64,000 nt of DNA, from assembly GCA_964019335.1 (NCBI GenBank), contig OZ025651.1:1-64000 (forward strand), given 5' to 3'. Below, one piece after another: positions 5,893-57,099 of the stretch. The position numbers were made by a program, and so were the translations under genes. The notes under the pieces are model-generated. The model ran no database searches. It saw nothing but the letters and a program-made list of their open reading frames with translations, and was not told the origin of the DNA. This DNA comes from Diplonema japonicum. Taxonomy: Eukaryota > Protista > Euglenozoa: Diplonemea. Numbering within the stretch: position 1 is the first letter of the stretch; every line of letters begins with the position of its first letter.

Positions 5893-6397
5893 TTAAGCGG
5901 GTTCGCACATGAGCTTGATGAACTCGGCAAGATCGATCTTCCCGTCACCGTTGGGGTCCACGTCGCTCATTACCTTTTTGGATTAAAATAATACTTTAAA
6001 TTCTTTCACAGAAACATACCTCCTTTGCCTCCTCATCTGTCATGGTGGTGTTGGCGAAGGTCTTGAGTGCATAGACAAGGTCCATGGCGTTCAGGTAACC
6101 ATCACCATCGTCGTCGAACTTCTGGAACACAGCCTCCAGCTGCTCCAGGAGCTCAGGCTCCGATACTTTCTTTGCCACAAGGTGCAGGAACTCATCGAAC
6201 TCGATCTCTCCCGTCCCATCCGTGTCCACTTCGCGCACCATCTCCTCCAGTTGCTGCTCGGAAGGCTTCATGCCCAACGACCTCATGGCACACCCCAATT
6301 CCTTCAAACAAATCGCTCCGCTGTTATCCGAATCAAACAAGTTGAACACATGTCTGTATTCCTGCACCTGCTCTGACGTCAAACCGTGGCTTGTCAT
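5893..6397 (-). CDS. Calmodulin-like protein with 4 EF-hands; intron 5974-6019
   Basis: Loops [24 protein letters not shown] and [12 protein letters not shown], plus [12 protein letters not shown] after the 46-nt intron. Too divergent to be calmodulin itself. Confidence 0.9.
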
Positions 6398-45279: not shown

Positions 45280-46650
45280 CTACTGAATGCTTTTTTGCAT
45301 GTCCTTCTGTGACCGTGTGGCGAAGCTTGTCGTGCCAGTGCCAACAGAGCGCTGTGATGTCCATGTTTCTGCTAAGTCGCGAAGCTCCTTGCCTGCCTTT
45401 TCACCCTTTTCCACGGATTCTTTCGCTGCTTTCAAGTCATCCAAGCAAAAATCAACGGAACCTGAGCCCGCTGAGAGTAATTTAGTTTGCTTTCTCTTCA
45501 GGGACACAATCCTTATCCCTTCTTCCAGCCCAATCAATGCCTGACTTTTGTTGTTCTCACTCACCATCTGTGACGCCGCTATTATCGCCTTGCTTGTCAT
45601 GTCAGTAAGTTCTGCCCTAACAAAGTTCAGGTCTGCGGGTACATCGGGAGTAGCTACCCTCGACACCTCAATGTTGACAGTTTCCTCCTCTATCCTGCCA
45701 CTCGTAGAGTTGTACACAATCGTTGCAGTACCTAGTATGCATTTCGTGTCAGGCTGGTCGATGATGGGAGGCAGCTTCATCGAAACGATAAATGACAGTT
45801 GCTGGCCTATGATGATATTATTTATGTTCAACGTGAGGCACCGCTGGTCGGCCGACAGCGTTTTCTTGTTGGCATCACTAACTACTGTGATTTCTTCCAG
45901 CACGTTGGGGCTGAACAGAACGCCCTCTTTCAGCTGCACTGTAATTGTGATGTCCATTGCCGCCACTGAGAATAGCGCACCTATGGCCGATGCGAAGTAT
46001 TCAACTGTGTTCTTCTCACGGATTGCGTGGTAACTGCCGCCACCGCTTTGGGATATGGCACGGAGCATAACGTCGTTGCAGTCATTTCCGTATTCGAAAG
46101 TGCTGATGGCGATGTTGTTGTTGTTCAGTCTGATCACGTGCTCTGTCATCGTGTCTGCTGATGTGATCCCTGCATTCACAGCCCCGTCTGTGAAGAGCCA
46201 CAGCGCACGGTACACAGAGTTGTCGGTGATCTGAGTCTTTAGCATTTCTCGCAAGCCGAGGGTGATCCCAGCCTCAATGTTCGTCCCTTTGCTGTGTTTC
46301 ATGTTGGTGATGGCCGTCTTGGCACGTGTCCTCCCTGCGTCATCCATATATAAGGGGGGCAGTATCACCTCCGCTTCTTTGCTGTAAAGTACAATCCCGA
46401 ACATGTCACTCTCGCCCAGCACCCTGCAGCCGCTGACAGTGTTTTCGAGAAGCAACATAAGGGACTTCTTCGCTTTTTGTATATTTTCTCCCTTCATAGA
46501 CTGTGATCGGTCGATGACAGCCATCAGGAACACAGGTCGTTCCTTCTCCTTCTCCTGTTTCTCGCCTCCGAGTACAAAACTGACCCTCGACTCTGTTGCC
46601 CCCTTACCAACTTCGCAGAATTCAAACCAGTGAGACAAGACGAGGCCCAT
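45280..46650 (-). CDS. von Willebrand factor A domain protein (possibly N-myristoylated)
   Basis: MIDAS motifs DRSQSM, GTNIEAG and LFTDG; N-terminus MGLVLS. Confidence 0.85.
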   Translation of the reverse strand: MGLVLSHWFEFCEVGKGATESRVSFVLGGEKQEKEKERPVFLMAVIDRSQSMKGENIQKAKKSLMLLLENTVSGCRVLGESDMFGIVLYSKEAEVILPPLYMDDAGRTRAKTAITNMKHSKGTNIEAGITLGLREMLKTQITDNSVYRALWLFTDGAVNAGITSADTMTEHVIRLNNNNIAISTFEYGNDCNDVMLRAISQSGGGSYHAIREKNTVEYFASAIGALFSVAAMDITITVQLKEGVLFSPNVLEEITVVSDANKKTLSADQRCLTLNINNIIIGQQLSFIVSMKLPPIIDQPDTKCILGTATIVYNSTSGRIEEETVNIEVSRVATPDVPADLNFVRAELTDMTSKAIIAASQMVSENNKSQALIGLEEGIRIVSLKRKQTKLLSAGSGSVDFCLDDLKAAKESVEKGEKAGKELRDLAETWTSQRSVGTGTTSFATRSQKDMQKSIQ

Positions 46651-48460: not shown

Positions 48461-49866
48461 TCACATCTCAGGGGCGCTCCTTTCGCCTATGATCAGATTC
48501 TTTTCTTTTGAAGAGATTGCGGCTTCTTGATCCCCCTTTCTAAGGTCTTCAAAGGAGTTGACCACGGAGTTGAGGAGGGTAGTGAGTTCTGTGACAGACT
48601 TGGATTCGATTTGGGGATCGAGACGGTCGGGGCTGGGCAGCTCGGTAGGTGGCGCTTCGGTTTCGGTTTCAGCTTCGTCTTCAGGTTCTTGTTCTTCTGC
48701 TTCTGCTTCTCCACCGTCGCCGTCTGTCTCGTCGCTGGCGTCCCAGAAGGGGTGTTTGAGCGCGTCTTCAGCTGACATTCGGTCCTCGGGATCGAATTTG
48801 ATCATTTTATCAACTAGATCGCAAAAGATCTCTAGGTTCTCCACCCCTTTCCCCAATTTCTCCCTCTCGTGTCGTATCACGTCAATGATTTTGACAACCT
48901 CCTTCTCGGGCTGCGTCTGCATGAACTCCCTGGCACGCACAGACACAATCTTCCCCAAAACAGCTTCAGAAGGCTTCGGCACGACCTTAAGTATCGAAAG
49001 CAGCTGCCCTCTAATATCACGCCCCTCAAACAGAGGTTTTCCTATCGCCATCTCCACCAGAACGCAGCCTATGCTCCACAGATCTATCGCTGGAGAGTAA
49101 GCTCGGGTTTCAAGAAGAAGTTCCGGAGCTCTGTAGTACCTTGTCACCACGTACTCTGTCATGTCACCCCCGTCAAGATCCCGTGCGAGCCCGAAGTCAA
49201 CGACGCGTAGGTCGCACGCCTTGTTCACTACGATGTTGCTGTGTGGATGTTACTTGGAAGAAAAGAAAAAGACGGTTTTTTACCTTGGCTTCAAGTCCCG
49301 GTGCACCACGCCGCATTGATGCACGTAGGCCATCGCGTCCACAAGTTGGTACCCAAAATATTGAATATAGTTCATTTCTAGTGCTCTGTGCATTTCCAAG
49401 AGCTTCGTAAGGTCGACGTCAAGAAGCTGAAAAAATTGGGTTTCCCCCTTCCCCCCCCCCCCCATTGTTCAACGTACTTGCGTGACAAGGTAGATATCAT
49501 TCGTGTTCCGCTCAGTAGTGACGGTGGGGGCTGAGAACAAGTCAATCAAACTTATAATGTTGTTATGACTGAAGTGCCGAAGAACGACCACCTGTTTTTT
49601 TTCTTCTTTTCTTCGTAAAGAGAGGAGATGGATACCTCCCGCACCACCCTGCGGAGCTCCGGTAGCTGTTCCTTTCCGGAGGAGGGTATCGCGATCTTTT
49701 TTATTGCCACCTCCACCGTTTGATCCCCATCCTTTGTGGAAGCCTTACACACAGTCCCGTACTCCCCGTTGCCGATAACACTGTCTAGAAGGTATCTCGG
49801 CGGGACCGTGAAGTACGTATCCTTTACCTGGTACGACCTCCATCCCTTGTCCTCTAGCGTTACCAT
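48461..49866 (-). CDS. MAP kinase (TEY); introns 49592-49635, 49427-49477 and 49239-49283
   Basis: IGNGEYG, VAIKK, HRDLKP(S)N, DFGLAR and MTEYVVTRYYRAPE. Confidence 0.93.
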
Positions 49867-50493: not shown

Positions 50494-50599
50494 GTGCCCT
50501 CCCCTGAGATATGCATTATGTTTTTTACTGCTTCATCAATCTAATCATAATAAGAGAATAACAACAATCTTGCTACATCTTCCGTCTTGTATCATACAT

Positions 50600-52389
50600 T
50601 CAGTGTAGCGGGGGCTGCATAGGCGAACTGCTGAGCAAGCACGGTGCATGAGGCGGGTCTAAAGGCAGCATGTTCATCTCGTCCCCGTTGTCCAGCAAGG
50701 GTGTGCGCAGCTTGATGGGTGTTGTGGCCGGGTTTGCGGAAGAGCTCTTCGACAATCCTGAAGGTGCGAACAGCTGCACCACGATAAACAAAGAGAATGC
50801 ACACGACACCACCACGCTCCCCATGCAGGCCCAGAACTCCCCAGCTGTCCTCGGGAGTGAAATAGACAACCAAATAACTGTTGTTGTTGTTTGTTTCTTT
50901 TCTTTTTCTTTTATATTGTGCCAAGTAAACGCATACGTGTTGCCGCCATGAACAAGCATGGGCTTAGTATTCTGTATCTGCGTTCAATAGTGATAATGGA
51001 ACGCCTTGTCACAGGGAAGCTCCCGCAAATGAGCAGTGCCCGTGCTTCCTCCTGGTTCATAAAGGTATCAAGATGTGTCTCTGCAAAGTTGCACAACTCG
51101 TCGAATTCAATGGTGCCGCTCTGGTCGGTGTCACACTGATACACCCATTCTTGCACCTCCTCCACAGACAGATCGCACCCACGGTCCTCGGCAAATGCGA
51201 GTAACAACGACCCAAGGTCCTGTGTCGTGATGCTCCCTGTCTTCGAGTGGTCGTACAGTTTGAAGACCTCCTTCAGCTCGGCACGCTGCTTCCGGTGCTG
51301 CACTTCAGCTGGTCCCCCCTCCACCATGAGCGCGTCCCGCGGGCCTCGAAGCTTTGCTCGCTGTGCCCTCCGCTTCCCGATATCGCTCTCCAGCTTCGCA
51401 TGCCGCGTGGTGAGATAGTTCACCAACGCGTATTCACATGCATTAAAAAACAAGAATAAGAAGCATATGATGAAGTAGTAGTCCAAGGAAGTCAGGTACA
51501 CAGTTGTGGGGAGTTCCTTCGTCAGTGTGTACATCAGTGTCACAAGCATGAGAAGGGTTGTTGCTGCTATAGCGGTTCTTGCAGGGATAGACCCAGCGTC
51601 GATCCACAAGCCCACGAAGGAGATCGACACCACAAGCAAGAGAGGGATGAACATCGACACAATGTACCGAGACCTGTTCCGCTCGAACTTGTACTTGAAC
51701 TCCACCTTCGAGAATTCCACACCCGAGTAACTGGCTGGTGGTACAACAGTTACCTCCGGGCTTAACAGGCGGTAGGCACCTGACGAAGTGAGGGAGATGG
51801 AAAACCCAAAGGGAACCTCCTCCTTGCCTGCCACCCCCTCTTGGAGTATGTCGAAGATAAGGTCTCTTGTTGGGTAGCCATAGCTCTCGAGGACTGAGAC
51901 ACATTCTTGGGAATCAAAGGGGAAGTGCCTGAAGCTCATGTCGCAGAAGATGGTGAGGACCATGCGTTTGGACCATAAGATGAAACCGTCATGCCAGAGC
52001 TTCGTGTACTCCTCGCCATCAGGAGACTTGATCTCGTTGGAGTTGGCGAAGAAACTGTCAGGACGCCAAATGAGGTCCTCAGGCCGCAGCATGATCATCT
52101 CCACACCACAGTGCTCGGTGGCATTCCATGTGAGCCGTGTGTCCGTCCATCCATGCCGCATGAACATGTTCAGGTGTACAGTTTGGTCTGATGTACGAAT
52201 CTCATTGATCTTTGCAACGGTGGCTGAGAGGGAGATATTGGTGGGCTGTGCAGGAAGTCTTCCATAGTCGTAGCCTGAGAAGAGAAGGGCGACGAGGCGC
52301 TCAGTGGCCTTCCGATGTTCTGTGTCGTTGCATGCAGAAGCCGCATCCACGTAAAGCGCTACAACAAGCAGGTGAACAAAGGCAATCAT
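50600..52389 (-). CDS. Cys-loop pentameric ligand-gated ion channel subunit with intracellular EF-hand pair, copy 1 (576 aa); intron 50878-50936
   Basis: Signal peptide, WTDTRL, IWRPDSFFAN, Cys-loop CDMSFRHFPFDSQEC, ESYGY, M1-M3, M2 PAR..TT.L, EF-hands, then M4 and an extra helix after the intron. Confidence 0.92.
50807..52285. repeat. Tandem gene duplication, period 2167 nt (partner 52974-54452)
   Basis: Near-identical DNA including the intron, with short divergent patches. Confidence 0.95.
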
Positions 52390-52778
52390 CCTCAGCCATC
52401 CACCCCGCTGATAATTATCAATACATGAAGAAAGGGTTAAAGGAATATGTCTATTTTCATTCCACTGTTTTAAAACTCCAAAAGTGTGTTTACAGAGTAT
52501 TTTAACGTCAGCACGACGCCACTAGTTTATTGGTACTCACCACAGTAGCTAAACAGGGTGGTAAAAGATAAACGAAAGGAATCGAGAAACGGGAAAATGT
52601 TCTTTTTTTCCCCATTTCCTGCCACTACTGTTTCGTTTTCTTCTGTAAAAGGAGAGAGAAAAGAAATCCTGTATCGCAACTCATGGAACTGGTGACATTT
52701 GTCCAGACGAATATTATAATTCTGCCCCCCCCCCCTTACCCCCCACTCACCGCAAAGTGGGGGTTGGGGGGTTATTGG

Positions 52779-54556
52779 TTACAAATTGAAGATGTTGTTA
52801 GTGCTTCCCGTTTCGGGGGTGGGGCAAGAGGGGTCCAGAGCCATATTGTCTGCAGAGCTCTTGAACGATCGAGGTGTGCTGCAAGAGTGCGTCTTCTTCA
52901 ACATCGGTGGCCGCTTCCTGCCAAACCATTTCCGTGGCGGGACCCAAGTAACCAACAACGTGAAGAGTGACACCACCACCACGCTCCCCATGCAGGCCCA
53001 GAACTCCCCAGCTGTCCTCGGGAGTGAAATAGACAACCAAATAACTGTTGTTGTTGTTTGTTTCTTTTCTTTTTCTTTTATATTGTGCCAAGTAAACGCA
53101 TACGTGTTGCCGCCATGAACAAGCATGGGCTTAGTATTCTGTATCTGCGTTCAATAGTGATAATGGAACGCCTTGTCACAGGGAAGCTCCCGCAAATGAG
53201 CAGTGCCCGTGCTTCCTCCTGGTTCATAAAGGTATCAAGATGTGTCTCTGCAAAGTTGCACAACTCGTCGAATTCAATGGTGCCGCTCTGGTCGGTGTCA
53301 CACTGATACACCCATTCTTGCACCTCCTCCACAGACAGATCGCACCCACGGTCCTCGGCAAATGCGAGTAACAACGACCCAAGGTCCTGTGTCGTGATGC
53401 TCCCTGTCTTCGAGTGGTCGTACAGTTTGAAGACCTCCTTCAGCTCGGCACGCTGCTTCCGGTGCTGCACTTCAGCTGGTCCCCCCTCCACCATGAGCGC
53501 GTCCCGCGGGCCTCGAAGCTTTGCTCGCTGTGCCCTCCGCTTCCCGATATCGCTCTCCAGCTTCGCATGCCGCGTGGTGAGATAGTTCACCAACGCGTAT
53601 TCACATGCATTAAAAAACAAGAATAAGAAGCATATGATGAAGTAGTAGTCCAAGGAAGTCAGGTACACAGTTGTGGGGAGTTCCTTCGTCAGTGTGTACA
53701 TCAGTGTCACAAGCATGAGAAGGGTTGTTGCTGCTATAGCGGTTCTTGCAGGGATAGACCCAGCGTCGATCCACAAGCCCACGAAGGAGATCGACACCAC
53801 AAGCAAGAGAGGGATGAACATCGACACAATGTACCGAGACCTGTTCCGCTCGAACTTGTACTTGAACTCCACCTTCGAGAATTCCACACCCGAGTAACTG
53901 GCTGGTGGTACAACAGTTACCTCCGGGCTTAACAGGCGGTAGGCACCTGACGAAGTGAGGGACATGGAAAACCCAAAGGGAACCTCCTCCCTGTCCACCA
54001 TCTCTTTTTCAAAGAGAGAATACACAAGGTCGGTCGTAGGGTAGCCATAGCTCTCGAGGACTGAGACACATTCTTGGGAATCAAAGGGGAAGTGCCTGAA
54101 GCTCATGTCGCAGAAGATGGTGAGGACCATGCGTTTGGACCATAAGATGAAACCGTCATGCCAGAGCTTCGTGTACTCCTCGCCATCAGGAGACTTGATC
54201 TCGTTGGAGTTGGCGAAGAAACTGTCAGGACGCCAAATGAGGTCCTCAGGCCGCAGCATGATCATCTCCACACCACAGTGCTCGGTGGCATTCCATGTGA
54301 GCCGTGTGTCCGTCCATCCATGCCGCATGAACATGTTCAGGTGTACAGTTTGTTCGGAGGTACGAATCTCATTGATCTTTGCAACGGTGGCTGAGAGGGA
54401 GACATCTATAGGTTGTGCTGGCAGCCTTCCATAGTCATAGCCTGAGAAGAGACTGGATATGATCTGCTGACTAGCTTGCCGCTGTTCAGCGAAGGTACAA
54501 TTTTCTGCAACTGCAACCTGTATGGGGAAAAGACACAACAATACTACGCTGCGCAT
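52779..54556 (-). CDS. Cys-loop pentameric ligand-gated ion channel subunit with intracellular EF-hand pair, copy 2 (572 aa); intron 53045-53103
   Basis: Same architecture as copy 1. Start MRSVVLLCLF at 54556 gives an exon 1 of identical length (1453 nt). Confidence 0.92.
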
Positions 54557-54794
54557 CACACCATGGCTTCGTCTCCTGAAGGCTCGGTAGTGGGGTCGTA
54601 AGAAACAAGAAAAAGAAGAAACTATAACGGATACCAGACACCAGACCACCTCACAAGATGAGAGAACGCAAAACCGTTGTGTCAAGGGAGGGGCAGTGGC
54701 GCTTGAAGAAAAAAAATCGTAAAAAAAAAAAAGAAAAAGGGGGGAGAAAAAAAAAAGACACACTATCTCCTCGATAATTCCCCTTTTACTTCTT

Positions 54795-55446
54795 TTATTC
54801 TTTTCTCCCTTCAAGTCTTTTTACCTCATCAAGAACTTCTGTTAGCACCTGTAAGATGTAAAGGTTAGCATCATTCAACACATACCTTTTTCACGCCTGG
54901 TGTATAGAGAACGCCTCTGTCGTCGAAGAACTGCCCTATGGACGCAGTGTGCTGCCCGATGCATAATGTTTTTTTGGTGGTGAAGGCATGGATGTGCTCA
55001 GGGATGCTGCCGGGGTGCTGGTGTGGGGAGAGAACTTCGACAACGACCTTGTACTCCGCTGCGAAGTTCGTCATGAATGTCTGGAGGCGGAGCCGTTGGC
55101 CTTTGGAGTTGGGGAGGGAGAGGAAAAGAGTGTCTTTCTCGACGTAGCTCATCAGAAGCTGCATCACCCCGCTGCATATCGCATACAGCACTGCACACAC
55201 AAACAGCATCGGCCTGTTAGCGGGGAACGGCACTGGCACTACGTGAGACAGCACCGCAACCCCAATTGCCGCCAGCCCAAGCCCGATCTTCGTGTTCGAC
55301 ATCCAATGGTCCGGCACATACCCCGCTTCCTCGATCAGTTTCAACACCTTGTCGTCGAGAGAATGCCTCAGCTGCTTGAAATCTTTCAGGTTCACCTGCA
55401 CCATGCTCGAAGGGTGCTCCTCCGGTACCTCGCTACGCAGCGGCAT
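54795..55446 (-). CDS. SPCS2: Signal peptidase complex subunit 2 (SPC25); intron 54849-54885
   Basis: LRHSLDD, two TM helices around PFPANR, YVEKD and SIGQFFDDRG. Confidence 0.88.
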
Positions 55447-55776: not shown

Positions 55777-57099
55777 TTAAATAGCGCAAAACTCTTTGTA
55801 GTTGCAGGATGCAGCCAAGGGGTAGGCCGTGAGGAGGTCGGTAGGCGAGCACCAAGGCTGGCTAGTGCGGCCTTCGCCGCAGCGCGGCCAGTTCACTTGC
55901 CGTTCGTTATGGCGGAGCTGGACCTGTGGGCCCGTCTGCGAGCAGTTGTAGAGCACCATGTCTACGTTAACTGCCATAGTGGAAATGACACCCGTGCGCC
56001 ACCGGCGAGAGGAGGCTTGCTCCCAAGGCATGCTGGCCGTGAGGGGGGTAGCATCCTTGTACAAGCCCAAGAAGGCAAGGACAGGCATCAAAGTCTCAGC
56101 GTGAGAAAACATATAGCTTCCACCAGGCAAACCAGCTGCCATGCTTTCCATCATCGCCTGCACAGTAGGACAGGCCAACTGCCACGACAGGTCGATGCCA
56201 TGGCCAGACGCGTAGTACTCGCTCAGATCAGAGTGGAAAGCCCACATGTCGTAGTCAGGAGCATCGAACACAGCACACGGTGAAGTTGCCTCAGACACGT
56301 TCAGGGCTGTCGTTTCAAAGGCGCACGCGTTATAGAACAGCTCGAGATCCTCAGAAGTGGGCACCCACATCGAAGGGTCAATGTCTAGCTTGGCAACCAT
56401 CTTTGGTATCATCGTGCTGCTTATGTTGACTGCCATATAGCGCTGCGGCTCTGCCACAGCGGGCGACGTCGCGTTTTGCAAGACGGCCTGGGTGTACAGG
56501 GGGCAGTTCGCAGCAGGGCGGAGGACCAAGTCGCCGTCTGCCTCAGGGTTACCCGAGAAGACTGTGACCATGGAGATGGGTGCGTTGTCGCCATCGCCGA
56601 GGATGCCCCTCCCCTCCATGAAGGACGACAGAGCGTATGCTACACCTGATACTGACGTCCGGGACTTGTAAGTTGCCTGGAAGGGGTACACGTTGGGGTT
56701 GTAGTTCTGTTGCATTACCGAGCTGTTGAATTCCAAACGGGCCCTTGCCCCCAGGCCGTACTGTTCCTTCTTCCCAACTGCGTTGAGTTCTTTTGCCGTG
56801 TTTTCGGCGAATGGTATTGTCCAGTTCTGCAGAAAGTGATAGTCGGGGTTCCTAATTGCACCACCTTTCGTTTTCAACAGCTCTTGCAGCGATACCAGAG
56901 GCTTGAAGCTCCCATTTCTCGAGCCGTGTCGGCTCAGATGATGCACCCGCACAGGCACACACTGTTCATCATCCTTGCCGCTCGCTGTCCCTATCACGGG
57001 AGACGACCAGTAGGGCGTCTTTGTTGCGAAATCATGCACCGTAGGACGCACGCTTGGAGGTGACACTGTCACAGCACAGGCGAGGAGGATCGCTTGCAT
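55777..57099 (-). CDS. MINPP1: Secreted histidine acid phosphatase, MINPP1/phytase-like
   Basis: TKTPY, RHGSR and FSHAETLMP; signal peptide. Confidence 0.85.
   Translation of the reverse strand: MQAILLACAVTVSPPSVRPTVHDFATKTPYWSSPVIGTASGKDDEQCVPVRVHHLSRHGSRNGSFKPLVSLQELLKTKGGAIRNPDYHFLQNWTIPFAENTAKELNAVGKKEQYGLGARARLEFNSSVMQQNYNPNVYPFQATYKSRTSVSGVAYALSSFMEGRGILGDGDNAPISMVTVFSGNPEADGDLVLRPAANCPLYTQAVLQNATSPAVAEPQRYMAVNISSTMIPKMVAKLDIDPSMWVPTSEDLELFYNACAFETTALNVSEATSPCAVFDAPDYDMWAFHSDLSEYYASGHGIDLSWQLACPTVQAMMESMAAGLPGGSYMFSHAETLMPVLAFLGLYKDATPLTASMPWEQASSRRWRTGVISTMAVNVDMVLYNCSQTGPQVQLRHNERQVNWPRCGEGRTSQPWCSPTDLLTAYPLAASCNYKEFCAI

What the first reader, a model, noticed from the sequence alone, without database searches (positions are those of the whole stretch)
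50600..54556. Cys-loop receptors with a built-in calmodulin-like EF-hand pair in the M3-M4 cytoplasmic loop
Seen: both pLGIC genes encode, in one exon after M3 and a basic helix, ELKEVFKLYDHSKTGSITTQDLGSLL...VEEVQEWVYQCDTDQSGTIEFDELCNF (about 51085-51279 and 53252-53446). EF2 (DTDQSGTIEFDE) is canonical, EF1 (DHSKTGSITTQD) is semi-canonical, and the unit aligns with a calmodulin N-lobe, including that of the protein at 5893-6397. Established: the pLGIC intracellular loop is normally disordered or helical and frames the ion portals. I know of no characterised pLGIC with EF-hands there. Inference: a pentamer would hold five Ca2+-sensing lobes under the pore, forming a coincidence detector for extracellular ligand and cytosolic Ca2+, or a directly Ca2+-gated anion channel, in a unicellular eukaryote.
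Basis: partly seen in the sequence, partly recalled or inferred. Interest (0 to 1): 0.92.

Follow-up and report, generated by a model that had tools for sequence, protein, structure and literature searches.

The report
Chloride-type receptor channel with built-in calcium sensor
Two neighbouring genes of a marine diplonemid flagellate encode GABA/glycine-receptor-like channel subunits whose normally floppy cytoplasmic loop is replaced by a folded, calmodulin-like calcium-binding module, an architecture shared by many diplonemids and, as far as I could find, not described in any paper.

Summary
Two tandem minus-strand genes (copy A 50600-52389, copy B 52779-54556) encode anionic-type Cys-loop receptor subunits. 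They have the CDMSFRHFPFDSQEC loop, a PAR motif and 9' Leu in M2, and their best PDB matches are GlyR and GABA-A. An EF-hand pair (Pfam EF-hand_7, 1.8e-13) lies between M3 and M4, and both Ca2+ loops fit the EF-hand pattern. It sits in the same exon as M1-M3.

The long ORF stops inside M4 because of a 59-nt GT..AG intron. A contig from a 96-97% identical relative skips exactly those 59 bases and keeps the EF segment. AlphaFold2 (pLDDT 91) gives a fully ordered loop with a four-helix EF lobe.

The genome is Diplonema japonicum or a near-identical strain. The architecture belongs to a diplonemid-wide clade, seen in transcriptomes of at least 7 species. Sixteen of 27 clade members keep at least one canonical loop, against 0 of 130 animal-type hits. 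Some paralogues, including three on contig C7, keep only a decayed version.

No paper describing it was found, although an automatically named ESM Atlas cluster already carries this architecture. Ca2+ binding and any effect on gating are inferred, not shown. I rate it a new variant of a known kind, of high interest to channel biologists.

The parts
50937..52389 (-). Copy A, exon 1 (aa 1-484 plus the first base of codon 485): signal peptide, ligand-binding domain, M1-M3, EF-hand intracellular domain, first half of M4
   Evidence: ORF; Pfam; AF2 model ma80f34812b53 with pLDDT 91.1
50878..50936 (-). Copy A, 59-nt GT..AG intron interrupting M4
   Evidence: Sequence. Run X1 contig record 1 lies on 50569-50877 and continues at 50937-51712, skipping exactly these bases. 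The D. ambulator transcript-derived protein P0001 is colinear across the joint. The joined frame is 1731 nt, a multiple of three.
50600..50877 (-). Copy A, exon 2: rest of M4 (..LIWLSISL), fifth TM helix (50768-50836, FWACMGSVVVSCAFSLFIVVQLF), cytoplasmic tail, stop at 50600-50602
   Evidence: Translation; alignment to P0001; P0001 AF2 model shows M4 as H459-488 and TM5 as H493-518
51901..51945 (-). Copy A Cys-loop CDMSFRHFPFDSQEC (C-x13-C with FPFD)
   Evidence: C149, P157, D159, Q161 and C163 are nearly invariant in alignments A3 and A5
51520..51588 (-). Copy A M2 pore helix IPARTAIAATTLLMLVTLMYTLT (PAR anion-type signature, 9' Leu)
   Evidence: aligned to vPARvslgittvltm of GABA-A delta and aPARvalgittvltm of GlyR alpha2
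51349..51489 (-). Copy A M3 plus the basic post-M3 helix (RHAKLESDIGKRRAQRAKL), predicted as one continuous helix of aa 301-347
   Evidence: AF2 secondary structure; sequence
51070..51309 (-). Copy A EF-hand pair (aa 361-440). EF1 loop 51217-51252 is DHSKTGSITTQD; EF2 loop 51097-51132 is DTDQSGTIEFDE
   Evidence: Pfam EF-hand_7 1.8e-13; calmodulin N-lobe matches at 1e-15; AF2 gives H361-379, strand 386-388, H389-402, H409-419, strand 426-428, H429-439 at pLDDT 90-96; loop pattern
50938..51069 (-). Copy A conserved hairpin (LICGSFPVT) and basic pre-M4 helix (TRRSIITIERRYRI) leading into M4
   Evidence: AF2 strands 452-454 and 458-460, H462-483; E469, Y472 and R473 are invariant or nearly invariant in the family
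53104..54556 (-). Copy B, exon 1 (Met at 54556, MRSVVLL...). Identical to copy A from aa 199 on. It differs in the signal peptide and N-terminal helix and in a patch at aa 175-198
   Evidence: 44 aa differences, none in M1-M3 or the EF domain
53237..53476 (-). Copy B EF-hand pair (EF1 loop 53384-53419, EF2 loop 53264-53299), identical to copy A
   Evidence: DNA-run contig X3 record 20 spans 52974-53962 at 100% identity, i.e. exon 2, intron, EF and M3 contiguously.
53045..53103 (-). Copy B intron, identical to that of copy A
52779..53044 (-). Copy B exon 2: rest of M4, TM5 (FWACMGSVVVVSLFTLLVTWV), a basic tail different from copy A, stop at 52779-52781
   Evidence: Translation; alignment

Best explanation
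The two genes encode subunits of a pentameric, agonist-gated, anion-selective Cys-loop channel of the GlyR/GABA-A/GluCl branch, in the diplonemid Diplonema japonicum. Their intracellular M3-M4 domain has been replaced by a single calmodulin-like EF-hand lobe.

Shown here:
- The domain order is signal peptide, ligand-binding domain with a canonical Cys-loop, M1-M3, a basic helix continuous with M3, a short linker, the EF-hand pair, a conserved hairpin, a basic pre-M4 helix, M4 (split by a 59-nt intron), an extra TM5, and a tail.
- The EF lobe is predicted to be folded.
- The architecture is old and conserved across diplonemids.
- The EF segment is retained in spliced sequences.

Inferred:
- The assembled pentamer carries five Ca2+-binding lobes on the cytoplasmic face, around the ion exit path.
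- Ca2+ binds mainly at EF2, with EF1 a weaker site. Binding opens the lobe, as in calmodulin, so that it clamps or releases one of the adjacent basic helices (post-M3 or pre-M4).
- This changes gating, desensitisation or conductance of a channel that is still opened by an extracellular amino-acid-type agonist.
- The channel would then couple a chemical cue to the cell's Ca2+ state.
For: Pfam finds LBD, TMD and EF-hand_7 on both copies.

The core matches GABA-A delta/beta and GlyR alpha1-3 at about 1e-43. Loop B ESYGY, loop D F-x-R, loop C Y-S-G-V-E-F and M2 PAR are aligned to the receptor residues. Foldseek places the model on GlyR alpha2, RDL, GluCl and GABA-A, but only over about 300-327 columns, so no solved chain covers the EF domain.

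The EF segment matches the calmodulin N-lobe at 1e-15. Both loops fit the EF-hand loop pattern, while 0 of 130 animal-type hits have one.

AF2 gives pLDDT 91.1 and pTM 0.79, with the EF lobe at 90-96 and a paired-loop beta bridge. The full-length ortholog P0001 shows the same fold, with M4 and TM5 following the lobe.

The spliced contig X1 record 1 covers M1 to the tail, including the EF region, and skips exactly 50878-50936. Within the EF domain it differs from the window by two synonymous changes and D406E.

EF-bearing relatives occur in D. ambulator, Artemidia, Namystynia, Sulcionema, Lacrimia and Hemistasia, and a partial version in Flectonema. All are transcript-derived. All fall in one clade separated from animal receptors (SH-aLRT 97), with EF-bearing members in every subclade. 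Several of them have two fully canonical loops.
Against: There is no functional data of any kind. Ca2+ binding, pentamer formation, agonist and ion selectivity are all inferred from sequence.

EF1 uses Ser3/Thr5/Asp12, which may mean low affinity.

Several paralog lineages keep the domain but have lost the Ca2+ ligands: the three C7 genes of the same genome, P0006-8, P0016 and P0023. The fold therefore also has a Ca2+-independent role.

No RNA run of this very organism was found. The only spliced contig comes from a 96-97% identical relative, in a run whose RNA nature is a guess. The D. japonicum transcriptome in EukProt does not contain these two genes.

The monomer model says nothing about how five lobes pack or what they touch.
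Confidence: 0.55

Rival explanations
1. The EF lobe is mainly a structural, assembly or docking module, for example an anchor to the cytoskeleton or flagellar apparatus, or a subunit-sorting or trafficking signal. Ca2+ binding, where retained, regulates localisation or partner binding rather than gating.
For: Many family members keep the domain with decayed loops: C7a-c, P0006-8, P0016 and P0023. That argues for a function of the fold that does not need Ca2+. From general knowledge, animal pLGIC intracellular domains mostly serve trafficking and clustering (gephyrin, RIC-3). Copies A and B share an identical EF domain but have different cytoplasmic tails.
Against: Canonical Ca2+ ligands are kept in 16 of 27 clade members across deep splits. 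In a 96-97% identical relative the domain shows only synonymous or conservative changes. The lobe is wedged between two helices that continue directly into M3 and M4, an ideal position to act on the gate.
Confidence: 0.25
2. The channel is gated directly by cytosolic Ca2+, making it a Ca2+-activated anion channel built on a pLGIC scaffold. The extracellular domain would be vestigial or only modulatory.
For: Five EF lobes sit next to the M3 and M4 extensions. Unicellular pLGICs have no known physiological agonist (PMC4795631).
Against: The orthosteric-site motifs (loops A-E, Cys-loop) are as well conserved as in GlyR/GABA-A. That is not expected for a vestigial ligand site. Paralogues without Ca2+ ligands keep the same extracellular domain.
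Confidence: 0.12
3. Artefact or dead gene: an assembly chimera, a pseudogene, or an EF segment that is spliced out of the mature mRNA.
For: The long ORF ends prematurely inside M4. No transcript of these two genes is in the D. japonicum EukProt set.
Against: Both copies have intact frames once a canonical 59-nt GT..AG intron is removed. Independent DNA runs carry the region at 100% identity. A relative's contig is spliced exactly there and keeps the EF segment. Transcript-derived orthologs in at least 7 diplonemids have the same order of domains.
Confidence: 0.03

Closest known systems
Anionic Cys-loop receptors (GlyR alpha, GABA-A beta/delta/rho, RDL, GluCl)
   Same: Pfam LBD and TMD; C-x13-C Cys-loop with FPFD; loop B ESYGY; loop D F-x-R; M2 PAR and 9' Leu; pre-M4 'E..YR..P' motif. 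Sequence E about 1e-43 and Foldseek E about 1e-26.
   Different: The M3-M4 loop is a folded EF-hand pair rather than a largely disordered or MX/MA segment. Many members, including these two, have a fifth TM helix after M4, which puts the C-terminus in the cytoplasm. The host is a unicellular diplonemid. The agonist is unknown.
Calmodulin N-lobe and other EF-hand pairs
   Same: Helix-loop-helix pair with two 12-residue loops and a short inter-loop beta bridge. PDB sequence matches at 1e-15 to 1e-17. Pfam EF-hand_7.
   Different: There is one lobe only, covalently inserted in a membrane protein. A 4-residue insert (EDRG) lies in the EF1-EF2 linker. EF1 ends in Asp rather than Glu.
Ion channels with built-in cytosolic EF-hands (plant/animal two-pore channel TPC1; polycystin-2 C-terminal EF-hand) and channels with resident calmodulin (SK, KCNQ, CaV/NaV)
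   Same: In concept, a Ca2+ sensor of the EF-hand type is attached to pore-forming helices so that cytosolic Ca2+ tunes gating. TPC EF-hands between the two 6-TM halves are described in PMC11085791. The other examples are from my own knowledge.
   Different: These are unrelated channel folds (tetrameric or dimeric voltage-gated-like) and none is a pLGIC. Here the sensor replaces the pLGIC intracellular domain.
pLGICs with accessory domains or Ca2+ modulation (prokaryotic DeCLIC and relatives; extracellular Ca2+ sites of nAChR alpha7 and ELIC), from my own knowledge
   Same: A pLGIC core combined with an extra element that confers divalent-cation sensitivity.
   Different: Those elements are extracellular or periplasmic (N-terminal domains, sites at the ECD interface) and are not EF-hands. 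Here the sensor is cytoplasmic.
Protist Cys-loop receptors catalogued by Jaiteh, Taly and Henin 2016 (PMC4795631)
   Same: Anionic-type Cys-loop pLGICs exist in a few unicellular eukaryotes (Emiliania, Aureococcus, ciliates, Monosiga). Their biological role is unknown.
   Different: That inventory mentions neither Euglenozoa nor EF-hands, with 0 occurrences of 'EF-hand', 'calcium' or 'Euglenozoa'. It treats the M3-M4 region only as variable.

Membership tests
Cys-loop / pentameric ligand-gated ion channel superfamily | Neur_chan_LBD followed by Neur_chan_memb above the Pfam gathering scores | tested here: met
   124.5 bits against a cut-off of 26, and 67.9 against 28.1
Cys-loop / pentameric ligand-gated ion channel superfamily | Disulfide 'Cys-loop', C-x13-C, with the conserved Pro/FPFD | tested here: met
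   CDMSFRHFPFDSQEC at 51901-51945. The Cys, Pro, Asp and Gln are nearly invariant in A3 and A5.
Cys-loop / pentameric ligand-gated ion channel superfamily | Beta-sandwich ECD plus a four-helix TMD with M2 lining the pore | tested here: met
   AF2 models with pLDDT 91 and 86. Foldseek TM-score normalised to target of 0.73-0.81 to GlyR, GABA-A and GluCl.
Cys-loop / pentameric ligand-gated ion channel superfamily | Pentameric assembly and agonist-evoked current | not testable with these tools
   Needs expression with electrophysiology, or cryo-EM. Only monomer prediction was available.
Anionic branch (GlyR/GABA-A/GluCl type) | Pro-Ala-Arg at -2' to 0' of M2, and phylogenetic grouping with anionic receptors | tested here: met
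   SIPARTAIAATTLL is aligned to vPARv and aPARv of GABA-A delta and GlyR alpha2. The nearest non-diplonemid hits are UNC-49, GABA-A, GluCl and GlyR. Selectivity itself was not measured.
EF-hand Ca2+-binding domain pair | Pfam EF-hand pair above the gathering score | tested here: met
   EF-hand_7 at 51.1 bits against a cut-off of 30; EF-hand_6 at 38.2 against 25; EF-hand_1 at 34.6 against 25.4
EF-hand Ca2+-binding domain pair | 12-residue loops with oxygen ligands at positions 1, 3, 5 and 12, Gly at 6 and a hydrophobic residue at 8 | tested here: met
   EF2 DTDQSGTIEFDE is fully canonical. EF1 DHSKTGSITTQD fits the pattern with the less common S3/T5/D12 (the pattern was recalled from memory).
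EF-hand Ca2+-binding domain pair | Two helix-loop-helix units packed as a four-helix lobe with an inter-loop beta bridge | tested here: met
   AF2 gives H361-379, strand 386-388, H389-402, H409-419, strand 426-428, H429-439 at pLDDT 90-96. The same is seen in P0001.
EF-hand Ca2+-binding domain pair | Measured Ca2+ binding and a Ca2+-induced conformational change | not testable with these tools
   Needs ITC, NMR or fluorescence on the isolated loop.
Calmodulin proper | A free protein of about 149 aa with four EF-hands in two lobes | tested here: not met
   Only one lobe is present (two EF-hands), embedded between M3 and M4. It is calmodulin-like in sequence but is not a calmodulin.

The most novel reading that the evidence does not exclude
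The built-in EF lobe makes these channels obligatory coincidence detectors, or outright Ca2+-activated chloride channels on a pLGIC scaffold. In that case cytosolic Ca2+ acting from below the membrane would be a true gating ligand of a Cys-loop receptor. This is a gating route not known for any member of the superfamily. Diplonemids would use it to link chemosensing of amino-acid-type cues to Ca2+-controlled motility.
Probability: 0.15. Interest if true: 0.9.

Novelty: new variant of a known kind. Interest (0 to 1): 0.72.

Why it matters
The intracellular domain is the least understood part of Cys-loop receptors. It is mostly disordered and is usually deleted for structure work, and no member is known to carry a recognisable sensor domain there.

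A natural family in which the whole loop is a compact, confidently predicted EF-hand lobe, joined to M3 and M4 by continuous helices, would be useful in three ways:
- It would be a tractable system for seeing how events at the cytoplasmic end of M3 and M4 reach the gate.
- It would give a candidate first example of cytosolic Ca2+ directly modulating a pLGIC through a built-in sensor.
- It would give a first functional handle on protist Cys-loop receptors, for which no biological role is known (PMC4795631).

Diplonemids are, from general knowledge, among the most abundant and diverse marine heterotrophic eukaryotes. The family is conserved across Diplonemidae and Hemistasiidae, so it is likely to matter for their physiology.

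Tried and rejected
**Kinetoplastid origin.** I first took the locus for an intronless kinetoplastid-style gene because all ORFs lie on one strand. I rejected this when the ORF was seen to stop inside M4, and the ortholog P0001 and the X1 contig showed a 59-nt cis-intron.

**Searches that added little or nothing:**
- Word-based search for homologous proteins with the single protein and with the family alignment returned almost nothing beyond P0001 and P0060 because of candidate overflow. The exhaustive representative search was what revealed the family.
With A2 it found no relative.
- The search of earlier findings by words gave nothing.

**C7 paralogues.** Pfam does not call EF-hands on the three C7 paralogues. 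I considered that they lack the domain. I rejected that because their loop aligns at 4e-22 with the EF-bearing loop of P0014, so they carry a decayed copy.

**Haptophyte label.** The ESM Atlas labels its EF/Neur_chan cluster 'commonest Haptophyta'. I could not verify this. None of the 30 best-scoring named relatives is a haptophyte.

**Spliced model.** The joined (spliced) protein of the window was not sent to any search or fold tool. Exon 1 and exon 2 were handled separately by reference. The joined frame was used only for codon arithmetic and synonymous/non-synonymous bookkeeping inside a script. The full-length fold was done on the natural ortholog P0001 instead.

Full report
**What is in the sequence.**
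The interval holds two tandem genes on the minus strand. Copy A has a 492-codon ORF at 50911-52389. Copy B has an ORF at 53078-54814 whose sensible start is the Met at 54556.

Pfam finds the same three modules on both: Neur_chan_LBD (5e-36), Neur_chan_memb (2e-18) and an EF-hand pair (EF-hand_7 1.8e-13, aa 370-436).

The proteins carry the hallmark Cys-loop CDMSFRHFPFDSQEC. Their M2 helix reads IPARTAIAATTLLMLV, which has the Pro-Ala-Arg signature of anion-selective receptors and a 9' Leu.

Against solved structures, the first 335 residues match GABA-A delta/beta and GlyR alpha1-3 at about 1e-43. Loop B (ESYGY), loop D (F-x-R), loop C (Y-S-G-V-E-F) and loop A (WRPDSFFAN) align to the agonist-site residues of GlyR alpha2. 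An amino-acid-type agonist is therefore plausible. That is an inference from the alignment plus my recollection of which GlyR residues bind glycine.

**The EF-hand module.**
The 84-residue segment 51055-51306 hits calmodulin N-lobes at 1e-15 to 1e-17. The only irregularity is a four-residue insert (EDRG) between EF1 and EF2.

EF2 (DTDQSGTIEFDE) is fully canonical. EF1 (DHSKTGSITTQD) also satisfies the EF-hand loop pattern but uses Ser3, Thr5 and Asp12 (pattern recalled from memory). I take that to suggest a weaker or less Ca2+-selective site.

As a control, none of 130 animal-type pLGIC hits contains such a loop anywhere.

**Where the module sits: intron and topology.**
The long ORF stops inside M4 (...ILSPCLFMAATR|MRLLGTI*). 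The D. ambulator homolog P0001 continues there with a normal M4 and a further hydrophobic helix.

The DNA shows a 59-nt GT..AG intron, at 50878-50936 in copy A and identical at 53045-53103 in copy B. Removing it joins ...FMAAT to L-IWLSISL. That completes M4 and adds TM5 (FWACMGSVVVSCAFSLFIVVQLF) and a tail. The joined frame is 1731 nt, or 576 codons plus the stop.

Direct support comes from public run X1. Its 1086-nt contig lies on 50569-50877 and continues at 50937-51712. It skips exactly the intron and covers M1, M2, M3, the EF domain, M4 and TM5 in one piece.

That run comes from a 96-97% identical relative, and its RNA nature is only a guess of the index. Even so, the exact GT..AG excision is what splicing predicts. 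DNA runs of the window's own organism carry the unspliced locus at 100% identity. One example is X3 record 20, which spans 52974-53962.

The EF pair is therefore truly in the M3-M4 cytoplasmic loop. With TM5, the C-terminal tail is cytoplasmic as well.

The joined protein was not submitted to any search or fold tool. Exons were handled by reference, and the full-length fold was done on the natural ortholog.

**Predicted structure.**
AlphaFold2 was run on exon 1 (484 aa, 69-sequence alignment) and gave pLDDT 91.1 and pTM 0.79, with no disordered stretch. Its elements in order are:
- M3 runs on as one helix to residue 347, which is the 'basic helix'.
- A 13-residue linker (pLDDT about 66) follows.
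- The EF lobe comes next: H361-379, strand 386-388, H389-402, H409-419, strand 426-428, H429-439, all at pLDDT 90-96.
- A conserved hairpin (452-460) follows the lobe.
- A basic helix (462-483) then runs into M4.

The full-length ortholog P0001 gives the same picture, plus M4 (459-488), TM5 (493-518) and a disordered tail.

Foldseek against the PDB returns GlyR alpha2, RDL, GluCl and GABA-A with only 300-327 aligned columns out of 484. No solved pLGIC chain covers this intracellular domain.

**Organism and family.**
The EukProt protein P0015 of Diplonema japonicum is 100% identical over residues 209-611 to a paralog encoded on contig C7 of the window's genome. Its N-terminus equals the neighbouring paralog. 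The genome is therefore D. japonicum or a near-identical strain, and P0015 is a chimeric transcript assembly.

An exhaustive HMMER search of 1.84 billion representatives gave 11,883 pLGIC hits. Among the best 60 scanned, 14 carry Pfam EF-hands. Every one of those with a name is a diplonemid transcriptome protein:
- D. ambulator
- Artemidia motanka
- Namystynia karyoxenos
- Sulcionema specki
- Lacrimia lanifica
- Hemistasia
- Flectonema, with a partial version

The nearest non-diplonemid relatives are animal UNC-49, GABA-A, GluCl and GlyR subunits.

I built a tree on the core columns only, leaving the EF region out. It separates a 27-row diplonemid clade from 60 animal-type rows (SH-aLRT 97). 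EF-bearing members lie in every subclade. The simplest reading is one old insertion before the split of Diplonemidae and Hemistasiidae, followed by decay in some lines. The root is not inferred, so the direction of change is an inference.

Namystynia P0010 and Artemidia P0024 have two textbook loops.

Decay is visible in the same genome. Three tandem paralogues on C7 (33% identical, with an extra Cys-rich N-terminal extension and no TM5) get no Pfam EF call. Their loop nevertheless aligns at 4e-22 with the EF-bearing loop of P0014. In that alignment DQDCSGTITAEE corresponds to NTK-HEKITSHT.

**How it probably works.**
Shown: the architecture, its predicted fold and its conservation.

Inferred: a pentamer would place five EF lobes around the cytoplasmic mouth. 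Each lobe is strung between a basic helix continuous with M3 and a basic helix continuous with M4. These are the two helices whose positions in animal receptors shape the portals and couple to the gate.

Ca2+ binding (EF2 certainly competent by sequence, EF1 probably weaker) would open the lobe, as in calmodulin, and change how it grips one of these helices. That would alter gating, desensitisation or conductance.

Because the orthosteric site is as conserved as in GlyR/GABA-A, I favour Ca2+ modulation of an agonist-gated anion channel (about 0.55). The alternatives I rank lower:
- A mainly structural or docking role (about 0.25). This is supported by the paralogues that lost their Ca2+ ligands.
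- Direct Ca2+ gating (about 0.12).
- Artefact (about 0.03).

**Selection hints.**
In the relative's contig the EF domain differs by two synonymous changes and D406E, and Glu is also the D. ambulator residue there. Changes in the tail are mostly non-synonymous. Only 38 of 64 differences were listed, so this is not a dN/dS estimate.

Copies A and B are 863/864 identical over 50937-51800, which looks like gene conversion. They diverge in three places: the N-terminal helix, a patch at aa 175-198 (56/80 nt), and the tails.

**Novelty.**
Nine full-text searches gave no paper on pLGICs with EF-hands in the intracellular domain, and none on diplonemid pLGICs. The reference inventory of protist pLGICs mentions neither EF-hands nor Euglenozoa.

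The architecture is, however, already present in public data. It occurs in EukProt proteins with precomputed Pfam strings. It also occurs in an 83-member ESM Atlas cluster automatically named 'EF hand/.../Neurotransmitter-gated ion-channel' (score 0.95-0.96). The few taxon labels of that cluster are mostly 'Haptophyta'. I could not verify that label, and I could not run an InterPro architecture query.

My verdict is a real, conserved, undescribed variant of a known channel family. Function is untested.

**Limits.**
- The metagenome scan found nothing.
- There is no RNA run of the source organism.

Noticed in passing
window 50600-50936 and 52779-53103: A 59-nt GT..AG intron splits M4 in both copies. 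Exon 2 adds a fifth TM helix and a cytoplasmic tail, and the tails differ completely between the copies (A is Pro/Ser-rich, B is basic). Most diplonemid relatives also have a TM5; the C7 paralogues do not.
   Followed up: yes
window 51801-51880 / 53968-54047 (aa 175-198): A hypervariable patch (56/80 nt identical) lies inside an otherwise 863/864 identical, gene-converted stretch. It maps to the beta8-beta9 (loop-F-like) region of the ligand-binding domain. The same patch also differs in the relatives' contigs X1 and X2. This may reflect diversification of the agonist site or subunit interface, or a heteromer of A and B.
   Followed up: partly
G000 contig C7: L003 1414-3204(-), L004 901-2772(-), L005 904-2748(-): Three more tandem anionic-type Cys-loop genes, 33% identical to the window's. 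Each has a Cys-rich N-terminal extension of about 100 aa and a decayed EF-like loop. They are intronless through M4 and have no TM5.
   Followed up: partly
P0015 versus L003/L004; P0006 versus G000: The EukProt Diplonema japonicum protein P0015 is a chimera of the two C7 genes, with 100% identity to each part. That identifies the genome. Another D. japonicum transcriptome pLGIC (P0006) has no copy in the 62.5-Mb assembly (best match 34%), so either the assembly is incomplete or that transcript is foreign.
   Followed up: partly
window 5996-6397 (-): A calmodulin/centrin-like EF-hand protein (EF-hand_7 9e-25). The ORF ends oddly (..EVCFCERI*), so it probably also has a small 3' intron. It is only weakly similar to the channel's EF lobe (35%, E 5.5e-4).
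   Followed up: partly
window 54616-54762: A long pyrimidine-rich, low-complexity tract lies just upstream of copy B's start. It attracts enormous read depth in all runs because it is repeat-like. It is probably the polypyrimidine tract of a trans-splice acceptor region.
   Followed up: no
window 48461-49866 (-): A protein-kinase gene appears split into at least two ORFs: the C-terminal half of a Pkinase domain at 48461-49228 and an N-terminal, MAPK-like piece at 49552-49866. This suggests further short introns in this gene cluster. The flanking genes are ordinary: SPC25 at 54871-55446, a histidine phosphatase at 55777-57099 and a VWA protein at 45280-46650.
   Followed up: no
ESM Atlas: One 83-member cluster of environmental eukaryotic proteins is auto-named for EF-hand plus Neur_chan_LBD and scores 0.95-0.96 to the window protein and to P0010. 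The few taxon labels are mostly Haptophyta. This is unverified, and the sequences could be mislabelled marine diplonemids or a second lineage with the same fusion.
   Followed up: partly
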